From the sequence record NC_023719.1: 64,000 nucleotides of DNA; one strand, given 5' to 3'. Below are positions 29,295-46,862 of the stretch, piece after piece. The notes under the pieces were generated by a model. The model was given only the letters and a program-made list of their open reading frames with translations, did not search any database and had not been told where the DNA came from. Each line of letters begins with the position of its first letter. Position 1 is the first letter of the stretch. The position numbers and the translations under genes are program-made.

Positions 29295-29337
29295 ACATTA
29301 GCGGCGAAAGCCGCTAATTAATAATAAAAATTAAATA

Positions 29338-29676
29338 TTGCTAATTAGACGCAAACCACGTACTGAACACGTCCATCATATAACGATATATATGAATTTA
29401 AACTATAAGAATATTCTTCTTACAAATAATACTTTGTATGGGAAATCATCTTAATGTAGAGAACATTATTTAGGTGATGCCGTTGACAAAACAGGTGATT
29501 ATAGTTTATAGATTAAGGTTGATATCTTAGATCTTAAGTGTCATAGTTCTTATTTATCAAGTCTTAAGGTTTTATACTGTTCACAATTCTTTCAAACCCA
29601 AGTAGTTTGGTTTCATGAGAGGTTGTTCATTGTCTCGTTGGTTTTACCCTTGGCTGTCTAGTTAGCAATTTTTTTT
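29338..29676 (+). ncRNA. About 340-nt structured RNA of unknown family
   Basis: Terminal helix 29338-29352 / 29653-29668, further long-range helices, ends in T-tract, no ORF. Confidence 0.75.
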
Positions 29677-29814
29677 ATTTTATTTTTAAAAAACAGTTTA
29701 CAAATTACGTATATTGGTATATAATAAATATATAAATAAAAATATATAAAACAAAAATATTTAAACATATTAAATTTATATATTTTATTGATTAATGAAA
29801 AGGTGGGTGTTTTT

Positions 29815-33057: not shown

Positions 33058-33192
33058 TTTGTTGTTAATTAAATCATTACTATTTATAATAATAGAATAT
33101 CTTAAAAATTAAACAAAAGGTGCTGCAGGAACTGAGAGAATTGTTCTTTACCATTTCCGTGAGTGTTAAATGAATTATCAGCCTTGTTTAAA

Positions 33193-33348
33193 TACCTGAA
33201 GCGGTAAAAGCAGTTACTTCGACATTATGAGTCCGTTGTCGGTGGTTCGAGTCCACCTCCCGCGACCATTTTAATTTATTAACTATTAACGCGGGATAGC
33301 TCAGTTGGTAGAGCACGTATATTACACTGTTTTAAATAATCTCAGGTA
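33193..33348 (+). ncRNA. yrlA: YrlA-like Y RNA (Y1) with circularly permuted tRNA module
   Basis: Conserved stem TGAAGCGG..AGCAGTTACTTC / CTGTTTT..ATCTCA enclosing T-arm, acceptor hairpin, then D-arm. Confidence 0.85.
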
Positions 33349-33523
33349 GTACATAAAGAGAAGAGAAATCTTCTCTTTTTTTATATTCTGTTAAAAAAGT
33401 TATTTACAAGTACTCAATTTTATGATATAATAAATATATAAGGATTAAATTTTATTAATTTATGTAATTTTCTTTATTTAATCTTATATTAAGTACTGAA
33501 TCAAAATTAAAAGGAGAGATAAG

Positions 33524-34594: not shown

Positions 34595-34664
34595 AATATT
34601 TAAAAAAAAATTAAAAATTTTGTTAAATAAATTCTAACTATTGATAATAATATATCATCTTAAT

Positions 34665-34757
34665 AATCATTTATGAAGCGGAAAGAACAGTTACTTCAAC
34701 TTTAATCCAAACTTGAAACCAAAACTATACTGTTTTTTAAAAAACTCATAAATGATT
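34665..34757 (+). ncRNA. Y-RNA-like module Y2
   Basis: TGAAGCGG-AAAG-AACAGTTACTTC...CTGTTTT..AACTCA in a 12-bp inverted repeat. Confidence 0.8.
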
Positions 34758-34857
34758 CAGTTTTTATCTGAAAGAACTAAAAATCATAAGTTCGCTTTCA
34801 TATAGTTTCTTATTACTTTGTATAAGAGGATAACTATATAAAGTTAAATGTAAATCA

Positions 34858-34967
34858 ATTTAATTATAATTAATGAAGCGGGAAAACAGCTACTTCGATG
34901 AAAATCTATTACACAATTAAAGCTTTTTAATCTGTTTTCACTTATCTCATTGATTTTATTTTAAATT
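34858..34967 (+). ncRNA. Y-RNA-like module Y3
   Basis: TGAAGCGG-GAA-AACAGCTACTTC...CTGTTTTC..ATCTCA. Confidence 0.8.
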
Positions 34968-35091
34968 ACTTATTAATTATTGATGCGGACGTAACAGTTA
35001 CTTCATACAAGATAATGGTATAACATGATTCCTCGCGCTCAACGGGGAAACTACACTGTTACAAATTATCTCAATAATTAATAAGTAATTT
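34963..35091 (+). ncRNA. Y-RNA-like module Y4
   Basis: TGATGCGG-ACGT-AACAGTTACTTC...CTGTTAC..ATCTCA; perfect 21-bp closing inverted repeat. Confidence 0.82.
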
Positions 35092-35097
35092 AAAGAA

Positions 35098-35176
35098 TCC
35101 TTGTTGAAGCGGTAATAACAGTTACTTCATACATTTGGCGTACACAAGCACTGTTATAAATAATCTCAACAATGGA
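35098..35176 (+). ncRNA. Y-RNA-like module Y5
   Basis: TGAAGCGG-TAAT-AACAGTTACTTC...CTGTTAT..ATCTCA. Confidence 0.82.
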
Positions 35177-35191
35177 GTTTAAAAATCAATG

Positions 35192-35361
35192 ATAACTTAA
35201 TACATATATTGATGCGGGATGAACAGTTACTTCTAATATATTGAGAATATTACAAATAATAGATTTAACTTTTTGCTAGATCCTTGGTTGGTTTTTTATC
35301 AATTTACACACGGTTTTTTACTTACTGTTTGTTAAAGATCTCAATATATGTATTAAGTTAT
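35192..35361 (+). ncRNA. Y-RNA-like module Y6
   Basis: TGATGCGG-GATG-AACAGTTACTTC...CTGTTT..ATCTCA; perfect closing repeat of about 21 bp; directly upstream of TROVE gene. Confidence 0.8.
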
Positions 35362-35413
35362 TATTTTTTTTTTGAACATAATAATGTACATAAAAACTAG
35401 GGGGAATAATCTA

Positions 35414-37045
35414 ATGAGTAAAATGTCTAAAAAAGTAAAAGAAACACGTAAAGCAGAAGTACTAAAACCAGTAGAGAACTTTATGGGTGGAATTTCTTAT
35501 GAACATAATCCATTACTAACTCTAAAAATGGTTAGCGCAAGTTCTATTTTTGGTGAACCCCAATACTATCGCTCAGGTGAATTTGCAGAAAAGAACGTAA
35601 GAGATGGTTCTTATCGTATTAATTCTGTATTATCTAAGTACGATATGCTTTTAGGTAAAACGTTTAATGATAAAAACACAAGTGAGATCATGGAAGAAGT
35701 GATTGATGCTGCTTTATCATATGATTTTGAAGGAACTTTACGATGGGCTGTAGAGCTACGTAAAGATTTCTATATGCGTTTAAATCCTCAAGTTATCATG
35801 GTACGCGCTGCGATGCATGAAGATCGTGCTGAATTTAACGAGAAAAACCCAGGTTTATTTGCTCAAATTCAAAAAGATGTTATGAGTCGTGCCGATGAAC
35901 CATCTAGCCAGTTAACTTATTGGTTACACAATAAGGGTTCTAAATCCGGTATTCCTAGTATCTTAAAACGTACTTGGAAGAATCGTTTAGAAAGCATGAC
36001 TCGTTATGAAGCTGCTAAGTACAAAAATGCAAATGTCGGAATGATTGACACTGCTCGTATTTCACATGCGAAAGGTGATTTAGTTGGAGAATTATTAACT
36101 ACTGGTACTATTGAGGTAGATGATTCTCAAAGCACATGGAATGTTTTACGTTCTAATGGCCAATCTTGGAAAGAGATTTTATCAACTATTCAATTACCAC
36201 ACATGGCATTATTACGTAATTTACGTGGTATCTTTGAAGAAGTTAATAACAAAGATCTATGTAAAGAACAAATGGATCAATTAAAAGCTGGCGTAGTAAG
36301 AGGAAAGCAGTTCCCATTCCGTTATTACCAAGCTTATAAAATGGTTTCTATTAGCTCTGTTAATCATAAGCAATTAATCATGGATACCCTTGAGGAATGT
36401 ATTGATATTGCTTTAGAAAACATGCCTAAATTGAAAGGTAAAACGGTAGTTTTAACTGACAATTCCGGTAGTGCACATGGAGCCTTTACTTCAGAATATG
36501 GAACAGTAAATGTAGCGCAAATTAACAATTTGTCTGCCGTATTAACTGCTAAGAATGCTGAAGATGGAGAAGTATACACATTTGGTGACCAACTCAAAGA
36601 AATTCCGATTTCTAAGAGAAATGGAGCTTTAATCCAAGCGAAAGAAGTTGATCGCGTTGGACAAACAGTAGGTATGGGTACCGAACATGGTGTATGGTTG
36701 TACTTGGATAAGATCATTCGCAATAAGATCCATGTGGATAACTTATTTATCTATAGCGATATGCAAGCTGGTCATGGCCGTTTATATGGTACTAACGCAA
36801 GCCAATATAGCAAATATATTGTTAATGGTCATTATATTGACGTATATAAGCTAATTGAGGAATATCGTTCAAAGGTGAATCCGAAAGTAAATGTTTTCAC
36901 TGTTCAAACTGCGGGTTATTCCAATGTGTTGATTCCAGAAGTGATGCATAGAGGTTCTGTTTTATATGGTTGGACTGGTAAAGAGACTGTCTATGCTGAA
37001 CAGATGATTAAGCTTTGGGAACAAGCAGAAATGAAAAAGCAATAA
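35414..37045 (+). CDS. rsr: Ro60/TROVE domain RNA-binding protein with C-terminal vWA domain
   Basis: N.MGG.SY, SS.FGEPQYY, R.DFYMRLNP, LPHMALLRNLRG, QFPFRYY.AY, vWA MIDAS-like LTDNSGS, IYSDMQ, GWT; start moved to ATG 35414. Confidence 0.92.
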   Translation: MSKMSKKVKETRKAEVLKPVENFMGGISYEHNPLLTLKMVSASSIFGEPQYYRSGEFAEKNVRDGSYRINSVLSKYDMLLGKTFNDKNTSEIMEEVIDAALSYDFEGTLRWAVELRKDFYMRLNPQVIMVRAAMHEDRAEFNEKNPGLFAQIQKDVMSRADEPSSQLTYWLHNKGSKSGIPSILKRTWKNRLESMTRYEAAKYKNANVGMIDTARISHAKGDLVGELLTTGTIEVDDSQSTWNVLRSNGQSWKEILSTIQLPHMALLRNLRGIFEEVNNKDLCKEQMDQLKAGVVRGKQFPFRYYQAYKMVSISSVNHKQLIMDTLEECIDIALENMPKLKGKTVVLTDNSGSAHGAFTSEYGTVNVAQINNLSAVLTAKNAEDGEVYTFGDQLKEIPISKRNGALIQAKEVDRVGQTVGMGTEHGVWLYLDKIIRNKIHVDNLFIYSDMQAGHGRLYGTNASQYSKYIVNGHYIDVYKLIEEYRSKVNPKVNVFTVQTAGYSNVLIPEVMHRGSVLYGWTGKETVYAEQMIKLWEQAEMKKQ

Positions 37046-39088: not shown

Positions 39089-39228
39089 TGCCAAGAAGCA
39101 TGTCCTGGTGTAATCGCAGAAACGCGAATCATGCACACTATGAAAATAGTGGTTATCTAAGGCTAATGAGTATAAAAGTCGACGTATACTTTCTTAGATA
39201 CGAAGGTTCGATTCCTTCCTCGGCAACC
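39089..39228 (+). ncRNA. Oversized tRNA-like RNA (about 140 nt)
   Basis: Acceptor TGCCAAG / CTCGGCA and canonical T-arm GAAGG-TTCGATT-CCTTC, but expanded D-loop and giant variable arm. Confidence 0.7.
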
Positions 39229-39233
39229 GTTAT

Positions 39234-39308
39234 GGTGGTTGTAGCTCAATTGGTTAGAGCGCTAGATTGTGGATCTAGAGGTTGTGGGTTCGATCCCCAT
39301 CATCCACC
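39234..39308 (+). tRNA. tRNA-His(GUG), CCA incomplete
   Basis: G-1 and C73; loop TTGTGGA. Confidence 0.9.
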
Positions 39309-39931: not shown

Positions 39932-40003
39932 GGTTCATTGGTCAAGTGGTAAAGACACCTTCCCTTACGGAAGGTAACATAGGTTCGACTCCTATATGGG
40001 CCG
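39932..40003 (+). tRNA. Glu/Asp-like tRNA body with aberrant anticodon loop (identity unresolved)
   Basis: Acceptor, D and T arms canonical; anticodon arm CCTTC-CCTTACG-GAAGG; CCA not encoded. Confidence 0.6.
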
Positions 40004-40059
40004 CCTAATATGTTGCAGAGATTAAGCTAATTGTAGCGCTGCAGCATTATTCTTAACGA

Positions 40060-40368
40060 GGGATTGTTAAGGATTCGACAGGGGAAAATAGTATAAGACA
40101 TGATACTCGTAAAGCATACGTTACATGCTAAGTTAAATATAACTAACAACGAATTACAAGTAGCCTAGTTAATAGGTGCCAAAACAATAGAGTTGCTCTA
40201 ACATCTATTTGAGGTTCAAAGATTTGAGCTATTTCTTACTTTAGAATAAAGTAAGTGGTGGAGCCTAGAGAAAACGCTGTAGAAACTAACTATTCAAATT
40301 GTAAATGGTATCAAACAAGTGTCTATATGAAAGTCTTCTGGACGCGGGTTCGACTCCCGCCAGTTCCA
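40060..40368 (+). ncRNA. ssrA: tmRNA; predicted tag (A)NNELQVA*
   Basis: 5' GGGATTGTTAAGGATTCGACAGGG; G3-U70; TAAATATAACT resume context; 3' GGACGCGGGTTCGACTCCCGCCAGTTCCA. Confidence 0.92.
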
Positions 40369-40766: not shown

Positions 40767-40846
40767 TTAACAAATTATTGAAGCGGTAGTAACAGATACT
40801 TCTTGCTGATGAAAAAACTGTTACAGTTAATCTCAATAGTTTTTAA
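40767..40846 (+). ncRNA. Y-RNA-like module Y7 (minimal, detached copy)
   Basis: TGAAGCGG-TAGT-AACAGATACTTC, 15-nt loop, CTGTTAC..ATCTCA. Confidence 0.78.
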
Positions 40847-41232
40847 CATATAATTTGCAAATAGTAGTATGGTATAGTAAAATGGGTCAAGTGTGTTGAT
40901 TCCCTTATTATTGCTATATTATTTGATTACATTAATAAAGCTGATATTAGTTAGTTACTTAGTGAAGCCACTGGTGAATCTAAGGGTTAGGGGAGATTAA
41001 TTGAATCAGCTTTTAATATGCCAAGTAGAGCTCTTTTAAGGGTGATAGTTCAAAGGACTGTATCGAAAGATTATGAGTGAAAATCTCATTACTTGGCTCC
41101 TCCAATGATATAGTGTGTTAAAGAGGTATCTAATTAGATATCTCTTTTTTATTTGTTTTTAAAAAATTGTTTATGTAGTTAAAGAATGATGATATAATTA
41201 AATTATAAAGAATAATATAAAGAGGTGATAGA

Positions 41233-41640
41233 ATGATTAATACTATTGAGGAGATTAAAGATAAACATGGAGAATCTGTAGATTGGATAGAAATAAGTAA
41301 GAATGAAAAATTGTCTGAAAATTTTATGAGAACATTTAAGAATGAATTAGATTGGAATTATCTTGGTTATAGTCAAAAAATGTCTGAAGATTTTATAAGA
41401 GAATTTCAGGATAAGGTAAACTGGTATTATGTTAGTTCATATCAAAAATTATCTGAAAGTTTTATAGTAGAGTTTAAAGATAAGGTAGAATGGAGTTATA
41501 TTAGTTATTATCAATTGCTATCTAGGGATTTTATAATTGAATTTTCAAATAAATTACAATATAAATATTTAGTGAAAAATTACAATTTATCTAAAGAATT
41601 GCAAGATGAAGTTAAAGTATTATTCGAACTTTTAAAATAA
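41233..41640 (+). CDS. 23-aa tryptophan-repeat protein
   Basis: Four repeats plus ELQDEV tail. Confidence 0.85.
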   Translation: MINTIEEIKDKHGESVDWIEISKNEKLSENFMRTFKNELDWNYLGYSQKMSEDFIREFQDKVNWYYVSSYQKLSESFIVEFKDKVEWSYISYYQLLSRDFIIEFSNKLQYKYLVKNYNLSKELQDEVKVLFELLK

Positions 41641-41683
41641 ATTTGTTAAAGAAACGATGACTATGGTTTATAATATATTATAG

Positions 41684-41953
41684 ATTAATTCATTCATAAG
41701 ACGACAACATGAAATATTGAATCGAGTAGGTGGACTACAAGCGATATATAGATGGATTGAAACCCCAGTCATGATTTCGAAAATACTAGTAAAGTAGAAA
41801 TTAAGTGATCTATATATTGTGCGGATAGTGGCTTAAAGTAATTTAAGTTTGTAGTTAAGGGAGAGCTTGGCCGGCTCGAAGGATCGGGGTACAAAATAAG
41901 ATGGGTAATCGTTAACTTTCGACTCGATGTGTAGATTAAATATTTCAATTAAT
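41684..41953 (+). ncRNA. About 270-nt structured RNA of unknown family
   Basis: Own promoter, no ORF, nested long-range helices, possible pseudoknot. Confidence 0.7.
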
Positions 41954-42000
41954 GTTAAAAAAGCTCGACTAATTTGATATAATAAATTTATTAATGAAAA

Positions 42001-42080
42001 GGACCGTTGCGCCGAGATGGTCGAAGGCACCCAGCTCATAACTGGGAAAATCACCGGGGGTTCGACTCCCTCACGGTCCA
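42001..42080 (+). tRNA. tRNA with CAU anticodon (Ile2 or Met), CCA not encoded
   Basis: Loop CTCATAA; GGACC acceptor resembles Bacillus tRNA-Ile2; slightly long variable region. Confidence 0.8.
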
Positions 42081-42248
42081 TAGCTCCATGGTTTGCTTGG
42101 GTCCATTAATCCCTCGAAAGCGTGTTTTACTAAAGAGATTCTTTAATAGAATCTCTTTTTTTAATACATGTATTTAAAAAACAGTTTACAATACATAGTT
42201 TATATGGTATAATGAATATATATAAATAAAAACATAAGGTGTGATAGT

Positions 42249-42656
42249 ATGATTAATACAATGGAAGATGTTATAAGAGAATATGGTGAAAGCTTTAATT
42301 GGGTAAGAGTCAGCAGTGACATACATTTATCAGATGATTTTATTAGAGAATTCCATGAAAATCTTCATTGGACAATAATGGGTAGATTTCTACGGCTTTC
42401 AGAAGATATTATGAGAGAATTCGAATCTAAGGTACCTTTCCAAGTAATTTCAGAACACCAAATGCTGTCTGAAAGTTTTATAAGAGATTATCAAGATAAA
42501 CTGTATTGGATGGATATAAGTCGTTATCAAGGGTTTTCAAGAGATTTTGCTGTTGAGCTTATAAGTAAAATAAATATTGAACGTTTTGAGAAAAATAGTA
42601 AAATTAGTGATGAATTAAAAGAAGAAATGAAATTACTCAAAACTTTGGTAGGATGA
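42249..42656 (+). CDS. 23-aa tryptophan-repeat protein
   Basis: Four repeats plus ELKEEM tail. Confidence 0.85.
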   Translation: MINTMEDVIREYGESFNWVRVSSDIHLSDDFIREFHENLHWTIMGRFLRLSEDIMREFESKVPFQVISEHQMLSESFIRDYQDKLYWMDISRYQGFSRDFAVELISKINIERFEKNSKISDELKEEMKLLKTLVG

Positions 42657-42660
42657 TAAA

Positions 42661-43482
42661 ATGAAAATAAATACATTAGTAGAAATTAGAGAGGTCCATG
42701 GTAATTTAAACTGGCAAGAGATTAGCAAACTAACAAATTTGTCTGATGATTTTATGAGAGAACATCGACACCTTTTAGATTGGTATATTGTTTTAAAATT
42801 TCAAAAAATTCCCGAATATCTTATAAGAGAATTTAAAGATGTCTTAAATTGGTATATTGTTAGTTATTCTCAAAATCTTTCTGAGGATTTCATAAGAGAG
42901 TTTGAAGATAGATTGGATTGGCGAGAAATATCTAGTCGACAGAAGTTATCTGAAGATATTATTAGAGAATTTCAACAAAGAGTTGATTGGAGTCATATCA
43001 GTTCAAGTCAAGATTTATCTGAAAGTTTTATTGAAGAATTTAAAGATAAAGTGAGTTGGAGTCTTATTTCAAGAGATCAAACTTTATCAATTCCTTTTAT
43101 AAGAAAACATGAAGATGAAGTAAATTGGCATTATATTAGTAGTCATCAAAAATTACCTGAACATATTATTAGGGAATTCAAGTATCAAGTAGATTGGAGT
43201 ATGGTTAGTAAATATCAAAAGCTTTCTGAAGACTTTATAAGAGAGTTTTATAATAGAGTTGATTGGAATCGTATATGTATGTATCAAGATCTTACTGAGT
43301 CTTTTATAAAGGAATTTGAAGGTGATGTAGATTACCATATGGTATCTAAGTATCAAAAACTCTCCAAAGAATTTATAATAGATAACTTGAAAAAATTAAG
43401 TTTTACAGGTTTAGTTAAAAATAAAAAGTTAGATGAAGAACTAAAAGAAGAATTAAAAGTCTTTTATGAGATGACTAAATAG
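42661..43482 (+). CDS. 23-aa tryptophan-repeat protein (10 repeats)
   Basis: Regular 23-residue period. Confidence 0.88.
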   Translation: MKINTLVEIREVHGNLNWQEISKLTNLSDDFMREHRHLLDWYIVLKFQKIPEYLIREFKDVLNWYIVSYSQNLSEDFIREFEDRLDWREISSRQKLSEDIIREFQQRVDWSHISSSQDLSESFIEEFKDKVSWSLISRDQTLSIPFIRKHEDEVNWHYISSHQKLPEHIIREFKYQVDWSMVSKYQKLSEDFIREFYNRVDWNRICMYQDLTESFIKEFEGDVDYHMVSKYQKLSKEFIIDNLKKLSFTGLVKNKKLDEELKEELKVFYEMTK

Positions 43483-43529: not shown

Positions 43530-44105
43530 GTGTTTAATAATGAAGTTTATTGGTATAATGCCAGTAGAGGTAAAATAACTGAAAATTTTGTACGAGAGCA
43601 TAAAGATCAATTAGATTGGAGAGTTTTAAGTCGCAATAAACATTTAACTGACAATATGATAAGAGAATTCCATGACAGAGTAGATTGGGATCTTTTATGT
43701 TGCGACGCGAAGCTATCTGAGAGTATTATGAGAGAATTCCATGATCAATTAGAGTGGTCAGATATATGTCTTTATCAAGTTTTATCTGAAGATTTTATTA
43801 GAGACTTTAAAGATGTAGTGAAATGGCGATTAGTTTCAAAGTGTCAAGAAATATCAGATAACTTTATAAGAGAATTCCATTATTTGATACATTGGAACGT
43901 GCTTTGCATATATAAAGATGTTTCTGAAAGTATTTTAGAAGAATTTAATTATAAGTTACCTTGGAATATAGTTAGTAGACATCAATGTTTTTCAAAAGAA
44001 TTTGCTATTAAATATATAGATAAGTTAGATGAGAGTTGCGTATTGAATGAAAAGATTTCTCAAGAACTAAAAGATGAAATTTTAATTTATAAGCAACTTG
44101 CGTAA
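43530..44105 (+). CDS. 23-aa tryptophan-repeat protein
   Basis: About seven repeats plus ELKDEI tail. Confidence 0.85.
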   Translation: MFNNEVYWYNASRGKITENFVREHKDQLDWRVLSRNKHLTDNMIREFHDRVDWDLLCCDAKLSESIMREFHDQLEWSDICLYQVLSEDFIRDFKDVVKWRLVSKCQEISDNFIREFHYLIHWNVLCIYKDVSESILEEFNYKLPWNIVSRHQCFSKEFAIKYIDKLDESCVLNEKISQELKDEILIYKQLA

Positions 44106-44547: not shown

Positions 44548-45060
44548 ATGATAGTAGTTCGCACAATTGAAGATTTATTAGAAGCATCTAATGGAGTAAT
44601 AGATTGGGGAATGATATCTTCAGAACTTACATTATCAGAAGAATTTATTAGTGAATATGCACTTGTATTAGACTGGTGGAGTGTTTGTAGATATCAAAAG
44701 ATTTCTGACGATTTTATTAGCAAACATGTTAATTTTATAGATTGGATTTCTATTTGTAGATATCAAGTTTTATCTGAAGATTTTATTAGGAAGTTTAGAC
44801 ATAGAGTTAATTGGCAGTATATATGTCTTTTTCAAAGACTTTCTGAAAGTTTTATAAGAGAATTTAAAGGTAAAATTGATTGGTATTGTATTTTTGAACG
44901 GCAAGAGTTATCAGAAGAATTTGCAATGGAGTTTATTGAGCATGCAGAATTTAGAGCTATAGATAGTAACCCTTATTTTAGTGACGAGTTTAAAGAAAGA
45001 GTTAAATTATTAAAGATATTGGCAGGTGAATGCGATGGATATGAAGGAAATTACTGGTAA
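44548..45060 (+). CDS. 23-aa tryptophan-repeat protein
   Basis: Five repeats plus EFKERV tail. Confidence 0.85.
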   Translation: MIVVRTIEDLLEASNGVIDWGMISSELTLSEEFISEYALVLDWWSVCRYQKISDDFISKHVNFIDWISICRYQVLSEDFIRKFRHRVNWQYICLFQRLSESFIREFKGKIDWYCIFERQELSEEFAMEFIEHAEFRAIDSNPYFSDEFKERVKLLKILAGECDGYEGNYW

Positions 45061-45790
45061 TAGGGGAATTGATTGGGATCATAAGTGCATGTTTGACGCT
45101 TTATCTGAAGAATTCATGGAAGAGTATCAAAGTGAGTTAAATTGGGAATATGTTAGTATGTATCAAATACTTAGTAGTGATTTTATAAGAAAATTTCATC
45201 ATAAACTTGATTTTAATTATATCGGAGGAAGAAATACTACTTTATCTGAAGATCTTATAAGAGCTTTGCAAGATAAACTTAATTGGCGTTTAGTTAGTTC
45301 TTATCAAGCTTTATCTGAAAGTTTTATAAGAGAATTTAAAGATAAATTGTCTTGGTACGATATAAGTTCTAATATTGAAAATGAATTTTCAGAAGATTTT
45401 ATTAGAGAATTTCAGTATAGACTTTCTATTAAACATATTTGTAGAACTCAAAAATTATCCGAAGATTTTATTAGAGAATTTCACGAAACGGTAAGTTGGG
45501 GTGCTGTTAGTTTATATCAAACTTTATCTGAAGATTTTATAAGAGAATTTAAGCACGATGTTAATTGGAATTACATTTGTGTTAACCAGAAACTTTCAGA
45601 AAATTTTATAAGAGAATTCCGTGATTTAGTTGATTGGAAAAATATTTGTGAATATCAAAAATTATCAAAAGAATTTATAATTGAATTTTTAGATAAAGTT
45701 TATTTCTATCATTTAATAGAAAATAATAGAATAAGTAATGAACTAAAAGAAGAATTCCAAGTAATGAAAGAATTAATGGGATTTAAATAG
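45035..45790 (+). CDS. 23-aa tryptophan-repeat protein
   Basis: About nine repeats plus ELKEEF tail; start moved to ATG 45035. Confidence 0.85.
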   Translation: MDMKEITGNRGIDWDHKCMFDALSEEFMEEYQSELNWEYVSMYQILSSDFIRKFHHKLDFNYIGGRNTTLSEDLIRALQDKLNWRLVSSYQALSESFIREFKDKLSWYDISSNIENEFSEDFIREFQYRLSIKHICRTQKLSEDFIREFHETVSWGAVSLYQTLSEDFIREFKHDVNWNYICVNQKLSENFIREFRDLVDWKNICEYQKLSKEFIIEFLDKVYFYHLIENNRISNELKEEFQVMKELMGFK

Positions 45791-46520: not shown

Positions 46521-46862
46521 GAAACACATTTATTTAGTGTTTCTTTTTCATTTTACATTAGGAACAATAATTTAAAAGTTTTAATATTCTGTTTAAAATA
46601 GTAACTAATATAATTATTATATTACTGTATTAAATAATAAAACATCTTTTCCACCTTACTAAAAAGTTATGAAAAACTGTTTACATTATATCGTTAACGT
46701 GATATAATATAAATATAAGGTAAGGAGGAAAGGAAAAAGAAAAAAAATGAGGAAATTAAAAAACCTCAAAAAAACAGTTTACAAATACCTTACAATATGA
46801 TATAATATATTTATAAGGTTAATAAAAACACCTAAAAATACACACATTGGAGGAATTAAAAA

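What the first reader, a model, noticed from the sequence alone, without database searches (positions are those of the whole stretch)
41684..41953. Unassigned 270-nt multi-helix RNA with its own promoter
Seen: ORF-free stretch between two promoters, with nested helices ATTAATT/AATTAAT (ends), TGAAATATT 41710-18 / AATATTTCA 41939-47, ATCGAGT 41721-27 / ACTCGAT 41922-28, GACTACAAGC 41733-42 / GTTTGTAGTT 41847-56 and GCGATATATAGAT 41741-53 / ATCTATATATTGT 41808-20. Loop ACCCC 41762-66 can pair with GGGGT 41886-90 (possible pseudoknot). Known: large ornate RNAs of unknown function occur in phage tRNA clusters. Inference: a new large ncRNA or ribozyme.
Basis: partly seen in the sequence, partly recalled or inferred. 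Interest (0 to 1): 0.7.

Follow-up and report, generated by a model that had tools for sequence, protein, structure and literature searches.

The report
Orphan small RNA gene in phage G
A gene-free stretch of about 250 bases in the tRNA region of the giant Bacillus phage G probably makes a discrete folded non-coding RNA that matches no known RNA family, but only its end-closing helix is supported, not the ornate fold or a ribozyme role.

Summary
The window is Bacillus phage G (genome position = window + 372000). The element lies in an unannotated 360-nt gap between gp556 and a tRNA-Met gene.

Taken together they are no more than shuffled sequence gives, and the first promoter is weak.

No Rfam family matches, even at E <= 10. 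No homolog was found in phage, plasmid, IMG/VR, JGI metagenome or GTDB collections, so covariation cannot be tested.

Evidence for a real RNA:
- It sits in an island of RNA genes: tRNAs, a tmRNA and Ro60-associated Y-like RNAs.
- GC is locally raised (0.40-0.46 against 0.16-0.29 in the flanks).
- In a public library labelled as probable RNA, one whole 248-nt contig equals 41702-41949 exactly, and nothing else of the 2-kb stretch laid on that library matches it.
- The contig's ends fall at the base of the one thermodynamically robust helix, P1.
- A natural 99.3% relative turns the single G.A mismatch in an extended P1 into G.U.

Verdict: probably a real, lineage-restricted, stable non-coding RNA closed by P1. 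Its interior fold is unresolved and its function is unknown. It is not the Ro60 Y RNA, and nothing supports a ribozyme. Interest is moderate to low.

The parts
41646..41674 (+). Candidate sigma-A-type promoter: TTAAAG (41646-51), 17-nt spacer, TATAAT (41669-74). Predicted start is about 41681-41683.
   Evidence: Read from the sequence. It has the same TGTTAAA-17-TATAAT layout as the neighbouring tRNA-Met promoter. The consensus scan does not list it because the -35 matches only 3 of 6. Inferred, not shown.
41702..41949 (+). Minimum extent of the RNA: the span of a whole 248-nt contig from a library labelled as probable RNA.
   Evidence: run X12, record 8: length 248, 0 differences, word depth 4.9, flanks uncovered. 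Contigs carry no direction. The + strand is inferred from gene orientation, from the G-U pairs, and from the fold z-score of -2.14 against -0.64 for the minus strand of the 270-nt stretch.
41710..41723 (+). P1, 5' strand: 9 bp, then a G.A mismatch at 41719/41938, then 4 bp.
   Evidence: Pair probability 0.8-1.0 for 41710-18/41939-47. In the 99.3% relative from run X1, 41938 A>T turns the mismatch into G.U and the MFE has a continuous 14-bp helix.
41934..41947 (+). P1, 3' strand.
41733..41753 (+). They pair with 41847-56 and 41808-20.
   Evidence: Complementarity verified. Probability 0.15 and 0.5 in the reference, 0.78 and 1.0 in the X1 variant. Unresolved without covariation.
41755..41770 (+). 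Local hairpin, 5 bp, loop AAACCC.
   Evidence: Pair probability 0.92-0.95.
41772..41803 (+). Local bipartite hairpin: 7 bp, a 5-nt bulge, then 4 bp.
   Evidence: Pair probability 0.77-0.98; present in both MFE folds.
41808..41820 (+). 3' strand of the 13-bp helix. It overlaps the 5' strand of the competing 14-bp helix 41806-19/41925-38.
41831..41848 (+). Hairpin with a GUAA (GNRA-type) tetraloop.
   Evidence: Pair probability 0.87-0.98.
41857..41933 (+). G+C-rich 3' domain; fold unresolved.
   Evidence: GC 0.44-0.46 in 80-nt windows, against 0.16-0.29 in the flanks. The predicted pairings differ between the reference and the X1 variant.
41955..41983 (+). Promoter of the downstream tRNA-Met. 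It bounds the element on the 3' side.
   Evidence: 10 of 12 matches plus a TG extension.
42001..42080 (+). tRNA-Met (CAU), 80 nt. Context: transcripts from the element's promoter that read on would run into it.
42132..42158 (+). First intrinsic terminator downstream. None lies between the element and the tRNA.

Best explanation
The gap holds a gene for a discrete, stable, non-coding RNA of about 250-270 nt, so far seen only in phage G and its near-identical relatives. It is read on the + strand like all its neighbours.

Inferred: transcription starts either at the weak promoter at 41646-41674 or by read-through from gp556. There is no terminator before the tRNA-Met gene, so the 3' end is probably made by processing: cleavage at the tRNA, then trimming back to the base of helix P1.

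Shown: P1 (41710-23/41934-47) pairs the two ends and is the only long-range helix that is thermodynamically robust. Three local hairpins are also robust. The long-range interior helices and the G+C-rich 3' domain are unresolved.

Function, inferred from context only and held with low confidence: a trans-acting RNA that binds a protein as a scaffold or decoy. It would belong to the phage's island of RNA genes (tRNAs, suppressor tRNA, tmRNA, CCA-adding enzyme, Ro60 with its Y-like RNAs), much like the stable species 1 and 2 RNAs encoded in the phage T4 tRNA cluster (recalled from the literature, not checked here). It is not a ribozyme or a riboswitch on present evidence.
For: - Location: an unannotated 360-nt gap with no credible ORF, in an island where the other large gaps hold RNA genes.
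- GC rises to 0.40-0.46 inside the element, against 0.16-0.29 around it, as it does at the tRNAs of this A+T-rich genome.
- Run X12, labelled as probable RNA, has a whole 248-nt contig equal to 41702-41949. No other record of that run fits the 2 kb laid out; the two others laid are short pieces under 90% alike.
- X12, X17 and X18, three samples of one study, hold 17, 12 and 12 of the element's 21 sampled words. That accounts for all the words they share with the 1-kb query.
- The contig ends 8 nt outside the 5' strand of P1 and 2 nt outside its 3' strand.
- That 248-nt span folds with z = -2.14; 6 of 200 shuffles do as well.
- The variant 41938 A>T in the 99.3% relative turns a G.A mismatch in P1 into G.U.
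- The promoter layout matches the adjacent tRNA promoter.
Against: - No homolog anywhere, so there is no covariation and no evidence of purifying selection.
- The helices as a set are what chance gives, and the 270-nt z-score is only -1.3.
- The library type of X12, X17 and X18 is the tool's guess ('RNA?'). Depth is only 4.9. Contigs have no strand. All three runs come from one study.
- Two labelled metatranscriptomes (X11, X15) share words with the 1-kb query but are not among the listed holders of the element.
- The promoter is weak and there is no terminator.
- The assigned function rests on context alone.
Confidence: 0.5

Rival explanations
1. This is a non-functional spacer. The region is merely transcribed, as the gp556 3' UTR or the leader of the tRNA-Met operon. 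The 248-nt species is a decay intermediate shielded from exonucleases by a chance terminal helix, or DNA carried over into the library.
For: The helices are no more than chance. There are no homologs. There is no terminator and the promoter is weak. Contig depth is low and the library type is guessed. Phage G has several other unannotated gaps.
Against: The flanking gp556 and gp558 mRNA regions and the rest of the gap are not covered at all in X12, which argues against DNA carry-over and against an ordinary UTR. The same element-only pattern appears in three samples. GC is raised. The other large gaps of the island that were examined hold real RNA genes.
Confidence: 0.25
2. It is a large structured RNA of a new class with catalytic or self-assembling activity. 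The loops ACCCC and GGGGT would form an intramolecular pseudoknot or an intermolecular kissing contact.
For: Its size and its position in a phage tRNA cluster recall GOLLD and ROOL. It has a GNRA hairpin and a G+C-rich domain. It is a discrete RNA.
Against: It matches no ribozyme or ornate-RNA model. At 250 nt it is far smaller than ROOL or GOLLD (sizes recalled from the literature). The interior fold is not supported. The only natural variant in the proposed pseudoknot breaks it (41889 G>A). There is no exon context for an intron.
Confidence: 0.07
3. It is the Y RNA partner of the phage Ro60/TROVE protein gp540 (35414-37045).
For: It is on the same strand as gp540, 4.6 kb downstream. Its 5' and 3' ends pair in a long stem with a mismatch, as in Y RNAs.
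Against: The phage has its own Ro60-linked RNA family carrying the motif GAWGCGG-N5-ACAGNTACTTC: five copies in the gap upstream of gp540 (four found by the pattern search, the one at about 34875 seen by eye), one about 2.2 kb further upstream, and one at 40780. The same motif lies upstream of Ro60 homologs on three independent contigs. The element lacks this motif, gets no YrlA hit, and is absent from those Ro60 loci. It is also twice the usual Y RNA length of 80-130 nt (PMC4201824).
Confidence: 0.04
4. It is a DNA-level element rather than an RNA gene: a miniature transposable element with 14-bp imperfect terminal inverted repeats (41710-23/41934-47), or a protein-binding region.
For: Inverted repeats bound a 238-bp unit.
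Against: There is a single copy in phage G and none elsewhere. There is no target-site duplication. The contig from the probable RNA library runs 8 nt past the repeat into the phage G flank.
Confidence: 0.03
5. It is a solitary CRISPR-repeat mimic, an RNA anti-CRISPR: the segment 41726-41763 ends in GGATTGAAAC like some repeats.
For: Weak hits to CRISPR-DR9 and CRISPR-DR7 (15.4 and 14.7 bits, E 2.3 and 8.7).
Against: The scores are far below the gathering thresholds of 45 and 37. The 11-mer occurs as often as chance predicts in the window. No host repeat was available for comparison.
Confidence: 0.02

Closest known systems
Stable species 1 and 2 RNAs (RNA C and D) of the phage T4 tRNA gene cluster. 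Recalled from the literature, not checked here.
   Same: A small stable RNA of unknown function, encoded on the same strand among the phage's tRNA genes, probably matured from transcripts shared with tRNAs.
   Different: About twice as long. No sequence relation was tested or is expected. Processing here is inferred, not shown.
GOLLD and ROOL large ornate RNAs (PMC5737381; 10.1101/2024.12.08.627333)
   Same: Non-coding RNAs of unknown function, often found in phages or prophages near tRNA genes.
   Different: No match to either Rfam model. The element is several-fold shorter (sizes recalled). It has no family of homologs and no covariation-supported architecture.
Bacterial and phage Y RNAs (YrlA/YrlB; PMC4201824, PMC12135203)
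   Same: The ends pair in a long stem. It lies in the same genomic island and on the same strand as a Ro60 gene.
   Different: It lacks the Ro60-associated motif shared by the true Y-like RNAs of phage G and its Ro60-bearing relatives. It has no tRNA-like module and is twice the usual length.
phi29 packaging RNA (pRNA). Recalled from the literature.
   Same: A Bacillus-phage-encoded structured RNA with its own promoter. Complementary loops could in principle mediate contacts between molecules.
   Different: No Rfam family of any kind, pRNA included if the library holds it, matched in the element. The loop complementarity is 5 bp, and a natural variant breaks it.

Membership tests
Any Rfam 15 family (including GOLLD, ROOL, group I intron, RNase P RNA, 6S, SRP RNA, T-box, raiA) | Covariance-model score at or above the family's gathering threshold | tested here: not met
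   only 9 tRNAs and the tmRNA in the window; at E <= 10 in 41550-42150, the only hits inside the element are 9.8-15.4 bits, to CRISPR repeats, a snoRNA and a lncRNA.
Y RNA / YrlA-like | Ro60-binding motif in the 5' strand of the terminal stem: GNCGAAN0-1G (PMC4201824), or the local motif GAWGCGG-N5-ACAGNTACTTC | tested here: not met
   six matches in the window, none in the element. The element's CGAA sites are preceded by CT or TT, not GN.
Y RNA / YrlA-like | Encoded within about 4 kb of the Ro60 gene, on the same strand | tested here: inconclusive
   Same strand, but 4.6 kb downstream of the gp540 stop. Absent within 10 kb of Ro60 homologs on L057-L060.
Y RNA / YrlA-like | Long stem formed by the 5' and 3' ends | tested here: met
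   P1 at 41710-23/41934-47, pair probability about 1.0.
Group I intron | Interrupts a coding or RNA gene whose exons rejoin in frame | tested here: not met
   gp556 ends at 41640 at the same 135-aa length as its paralog gp558. ARAGORN with introns allowed finds no split tRNA.
Group I intron | Conserved core (P3-P7 pseudoknot, G-binding site) | tested here: inconclusive
   No hit to the Rfam model at E <= 10. The core was not modelled by hand.
Stable RNAs of phage tRNA clusters (T4 species 1/2 kind) | Encoded among the phage tRNA genes on the same strand | tested here: met
   tRNA-Gly lies about 1.05 kb upstream (1.07 kb from the RNA span) and tRNA-Met 47 nt downstream (51 nt from the RNA span), all on the + strand.
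Stable RNAs of phage tRNA clusters (T4 species 1/2 kind) | Accumulates as a discrete RNA species | tested here: inconclusive
   A whole 248-nt contig in one probable RNA library, and element-only words in two more libraries of the same study. Library type is guessed and depth is 4.9.
Stable RNAs of phage tRNA clusters (T4 species 1/2 kind) | Matured from a precursor shared with tRNAs | not testable with these tools
   Only the absence of a terminator before tRNA-Met is seen.
Miniature transposable element | Several copies, and a target-site duplication | tested here: not met
   One copy. The flanks CA and AT differ.

The most novel reading that the evidence does not exclude
The RNA founds a new class of structured phage RNA with tertiary or quaternary architecture: a pseudoknot or kissing contact between the loops at 41760-66 and 41886-90, and a GNRA hairpin docking. 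It would act as a ribozyme or as a self-assembling decoy against a host RNA-targeting defence. Its relatives would have been missed only because jumbo phages of the phage G lineage are barely sampled.
Probability: 0.08. Interest if true: 0.7.

Novelty: new member of a known kind. Interest (0 to 1): 0.35.

Why it matters
Phage G was long the largest cultured phage, and about 30 kb of its genome is devoted to RNA biology: tRNAs, a suppressor tRNA, a tmRNA, a CCA-adding enzyme, and Ro60 with its Y-like RNAs.

An extra abundant stable RNA in that island would be a new player in how jumbo phages take over or protect the host's RNA machinery. It is small enough (about 250 nt) for probing, pull-down and deletion experiments.

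As it stands it is a single-lineage candidate without comparative support. Its value is as a concrete, cheap experimental target rather than as an established new RNA class.

Tried and rejected
- Rfam at gathering threshold and at E <= 10: nothing relevant.
- blastn (word 11) against 50,697 phage records and 72,556 plasmids: only phage G itself, one place.
- Exact 18- to 21-mer scans of IMG/VR, GTDB genomes and JGI metagenomes. All hits outside phage G were chance matches in unrelated, mostly G+C-rich or coding sequence.
- An anchor on the unusual D-arm of tRNA-Met in IMG/VR: only unrelated loci.
- Synteny anchors. gp556, gp560 and gp563 all belong to one multi-copy repeat family, with best hits around 50% identity, so they give no orthologous loci. 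Exact look-up of gp556, gp558 and gp559 found nothing.
- Ro60 (gp540) as anchor. Loci L057-L060 carry the Y-like RNAs but not the element (nhmmer), and they have no tRNAs.
- Paralogs in the window: none.
- Decayed copy of the neighbouring repeat genes: tblastn E >= 0.05 against a 360-nt database, rejected.
- Reading frames with UAA read through, because the phage has a UUA-anticodon tRNA: no convincing frame on the + strand.
- tRNA with an intron, or a tRNA-like module: none.
- Apparent enrichment of the element in DNA runs was dismissed. Those runs were selected by overlap with the query, and low-coverage contigs fall at random.

Full report
**Identity of the window.** Window 41600-42150 is 100% identical to Bacillus phage G (JN638751.1 / NC_023719.1) at 413600-414150, so genome position = window + 372000. 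The element (genome 413684-413953) has no annotated feature under it. It lies between gp556 (41233-41640, +) and tRNA-Met(CAU) (42001-42080, +). The surrounding 30 kb is an island of RNA genes:
- a CCA-adding enzyme, gp522;
- a TROVE/Ro60 protein, gp540, at 35414-37045;
- ten tRNAs, one with anticodon UUA;
- a tmRNA.

**Check of the observation.** Their statistical weight is small.
- Allowing G-U, the best mutually compatible set of helices of 7 bp or more totals 49 bp. Dinucleotide shuffles give 46.9 +/- 6.4, and 193 of 500 do as well.
- The 270-nt stretch folds at -57.1 kcal/mol with z = -1.30 on the + strand and z = -0.64 on the - strand.
- In the thermodynamic ensemble only P1 (41710-18/41939-47) is robust, at 0.8-1.0.
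- The 13-bp helix 41741-53/41808-20 has probability 0.5 and competes with a 14-bp helix, 41806-19/41925-38.
- The 7-bp helix 41721-27/41922-28 and the 10-bp helix 41733-42/41847-56 have probabilities of 0.12-0.15.
- Three local hairpins are robust: 41755-70, 41772-803, and 41831-48 with a GUAA loop.

The downstream promoter (41955-83) is a good extended -10 promoter. The upstream one has a perfect TATAAT (41669-74), but its -35 (TTAAAG, 41646-51, 17-nt spacer) matches 3 of 6, so the scan misses it. It does share the TGTTAAA-17-TATAAT layout of its neighbour. No intrinsic terminator lies between the element and the tRNA; the next one is at 42132-58.

**Is it coding, or a remnant?** The only ORFs are 26 aa on the + strand and 34, 59 and 82 aa on the - strand, the last of these antisense to the tRNA. 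The three minus-strand ORFs have no PHROG match; the 26-aa one was not scanned. Reading UAA through does not open a credible + strand frame. The gap is not a decayed copy of the flanking repeat genes. ARAGORN with introns allowed finds no split tRNA.

**Known families.** At gathering thresholds the window has only tRNAs and the tmRNA. At E <= 10 in 41550-42150, the only hits inside the element score 9.8-15.4 bits, to CRISPR repeats, a snoRNA and a lncRNA. The CRISPR-like hits rest on a GGATTGAAAC ending, an 11-mer that occurs as often as chance predicts.

**Homologs.** None was found.
- blastn at word size 11 against phages and plasmids returns only phage G, at one place.
- Exact-word scans of IMG/VR, GTDB genomes and JGI metagenomes with four different segments returned only chance matches.
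- The neighbouring proteins gp556, gp560 and gp563 belong to one multi-copy repeat family and gave no orthologous anchor.
- Ro60 homologs at about 60% identity are common, but their loci contain neither the element nor tRNAs.

Covariation, the decisive test of the structure, is therefore out of reach here.

**Evidence that an RNA is made.** Runs X12, X17 and X18 are three samples of one study, labelled by the tool as probable RNA. They hold 17, 12 and 12 of the element's 21 sampled words, which accounts for all the words they share with the 1-kb query.

Laying X12 on 40900-42900 gives one contig of 248 nt whose whole length equals 41702-41949, with no difference, at word depth 4.9. Nothing else of the stretch is covered apart from two spurious pieces below 90% identity. 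The contig runs 8 nt past the 5' strand of P1 into phage G flank sequence and ends 2 nt after the 3' strand of P1. It therefore comes from the phage G context, and its ends sit at the base of the only robust helix. That 248-nt span folds with z = -2.14; 6 of 200 shuffles do as well.

Caveats:
- the library type is a guess;
- contigs carry no strand;
- the depth is low;
- all three runs come from one study;
- two labelled metatranscriptomes (X11, X15) share words with the 1-kb query but are not among the listed holders of the element.

I discount the apparent enrichment of the element in DNA runs. Those runs were chosen by overlap with the query, and low-coverage contigs fall at random.

**Natural variation.** Run X1 (soil) carries a relative with 12 differences over 1780 nt. 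Three of them lie in the element.
- 41938 A>T turns the G.A mismatch between 41719 and 41938 into G.U. This makes P1 a continuous 14-bp helix (41710-23/41934-47). In that variant the probabilities of the 10-bp and 13-bp helices rise to 0.78 and 1.0 and the competing helix vanishes. This is one one-sided change: mild support for an extended P1.
- 41889 G>A breaks the proposed ACCCC/GGGGT contact.

**Composition.** In 80-nt windows GC is 0.40 at 41700-79 and 0.44-0.46 at 41820-939. It is 0.16-0.21 just upstream and 0.28 just downstream, and 0.46-0.56 at the tRNA. This is the pattern of structured RNA genes in an A+T-rich genome.

**Relation to Ro60.** The Y RNA idea was tested and rejected. The motif GAWGCGG-N5-ACAGNTACTTC matches at six places in the pattern search, against 0 in 100 shuffles: 33198, 34675, 34982, 35106, 35211 and 40780. 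A seventh copy at about 34875 was seen by eye. Each copy lies at the top of a long stem formed by flanking inverted repeats.

The same motif lies just upstream of Ro60 homologs on independent contigs L057, L058 and L059/L060. Both stems show compensatory changes. The copy at 33198 is followed by a tRNA-like module that matches YrlA at 36.2 bits, E 1.3e-5. Y-like RNAs in phage G were already reported, according to PMC12135203, which cites PMC4201824. The 270-nt element has none of these features.

**Conclusion.** The most likely reading (confidence about 0.5) is a real, lineage-restricted, stable non-coding RNA of about 250-270 nt. It is closed by P1, matured by processing rather than by termination, and acts in trans as a protein-binding RNA within the phage's RNA island. 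Its nearest analogues in kind are the unexplained stable RNAs of the T4 tRNA cluster.

The main rival (0.25) is a transcribed spacer whose protected fragment shows up in one study. A ribozyme or ornate RNA, a Y RNA, a transposable-element remnant and a CRISPR-repeat mimic are each unlikely (0.07 or less).

Noticed in passing
window 33192-33383; 34660-35376; 40773-40845; also L057 5100-6040, L058 9672-9790, L059 9330-9735: A family of Ro60-associated Y-like RNAs marked by GAWGCGG-N5-ACAGNTACTTC at the top of a long 5'/3' stem. It comprises one YrlA-like copy with a tRNA-like module (33233-33319, YrlA 36.2 bits) and its own terminator, a tandem array of five shorter copies in the 1.06-kb gap just upstream of the Ro60 gene gp540, and one copy at 40780. 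The motif recurs upstream of Ro60 homologs on three independent contigs, with compensatory changes in both stems. Y-like RNA in phage G has been reported before (PMC12135203 citing PMC4201824); I could not check whether the tandem array has. None of these copies is annotated in the GenBank record.
   Followed up: partly
window 40854-41150: A second candidate small RNA in the ORF-free gap between tRNA-Gly and gp556. It has a promoter-like site at 40854-40883 and a strong intrinsic terminator at 41120-41147, with about 260 nt between them at GC 0.35-0.39. It folds with z = -2.90 (2 of 200 shuffles do as well) and has no Rfam match.
   Followed up: partly
window 39179-39234: A T-arm-like hairpin (GAAGG-TTCGATT-CCTTC, about 39200-39217) in the 157-nt gap between tRNA-Gln and tRNA-His. 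Together with the D-arm of tRNA-His it gives a weak YrlA hit (24 bits). It may be a tRNA remnant or an odd tRNA-like RNA.
   Followed up: partly
window 39932-40005 and 40060-40368: A tRNA with anticodon UUA, which would read the UAA stop codon, sits next to a phage tmRNA with tag peptide AKLNITNNELQVA. Both are annotated in GenBank.
   Followed up: no
window 41233-41640, 42249-42656, 42661-43482, 43530-44105, 45035-45790: gp556, gp558, gp559, gp560 and gp563 are paralogs of one widely expanded repeat family: phrog_3532, with homologs carrying PF24703 or PF08004, called 'tryptophan repeat gene family' in phage BpSp. The family occupies at least 21 places in phage G, and the RNA gene sits inside this expansion.
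   Followed up: partly
window 42143-42147: In run X3 the loop of the terminator hairpin after tRNA-Met differs at 42143, 42145 and 42147 (T>A, A>T, T>A). That is the reverse complement of the loop, as if the hairpin loop had flipped.
   Followed up: no
window 29295-29814 and 46521-46862: Two further unannotated gaps of 520 and 340 nt in the same island. They do not carry the Y-like motif and were not examined further.
   Followed up: no
window 42001-42080: The tRNA-Met(CAU) downstream of the element is 80 nt long, with an enlarged D-loop and its own extended -10 promoter. Whether it acts as an initiator, an elongator or a lysidine-modified Ile tRNA is not known.
   Followed up: no
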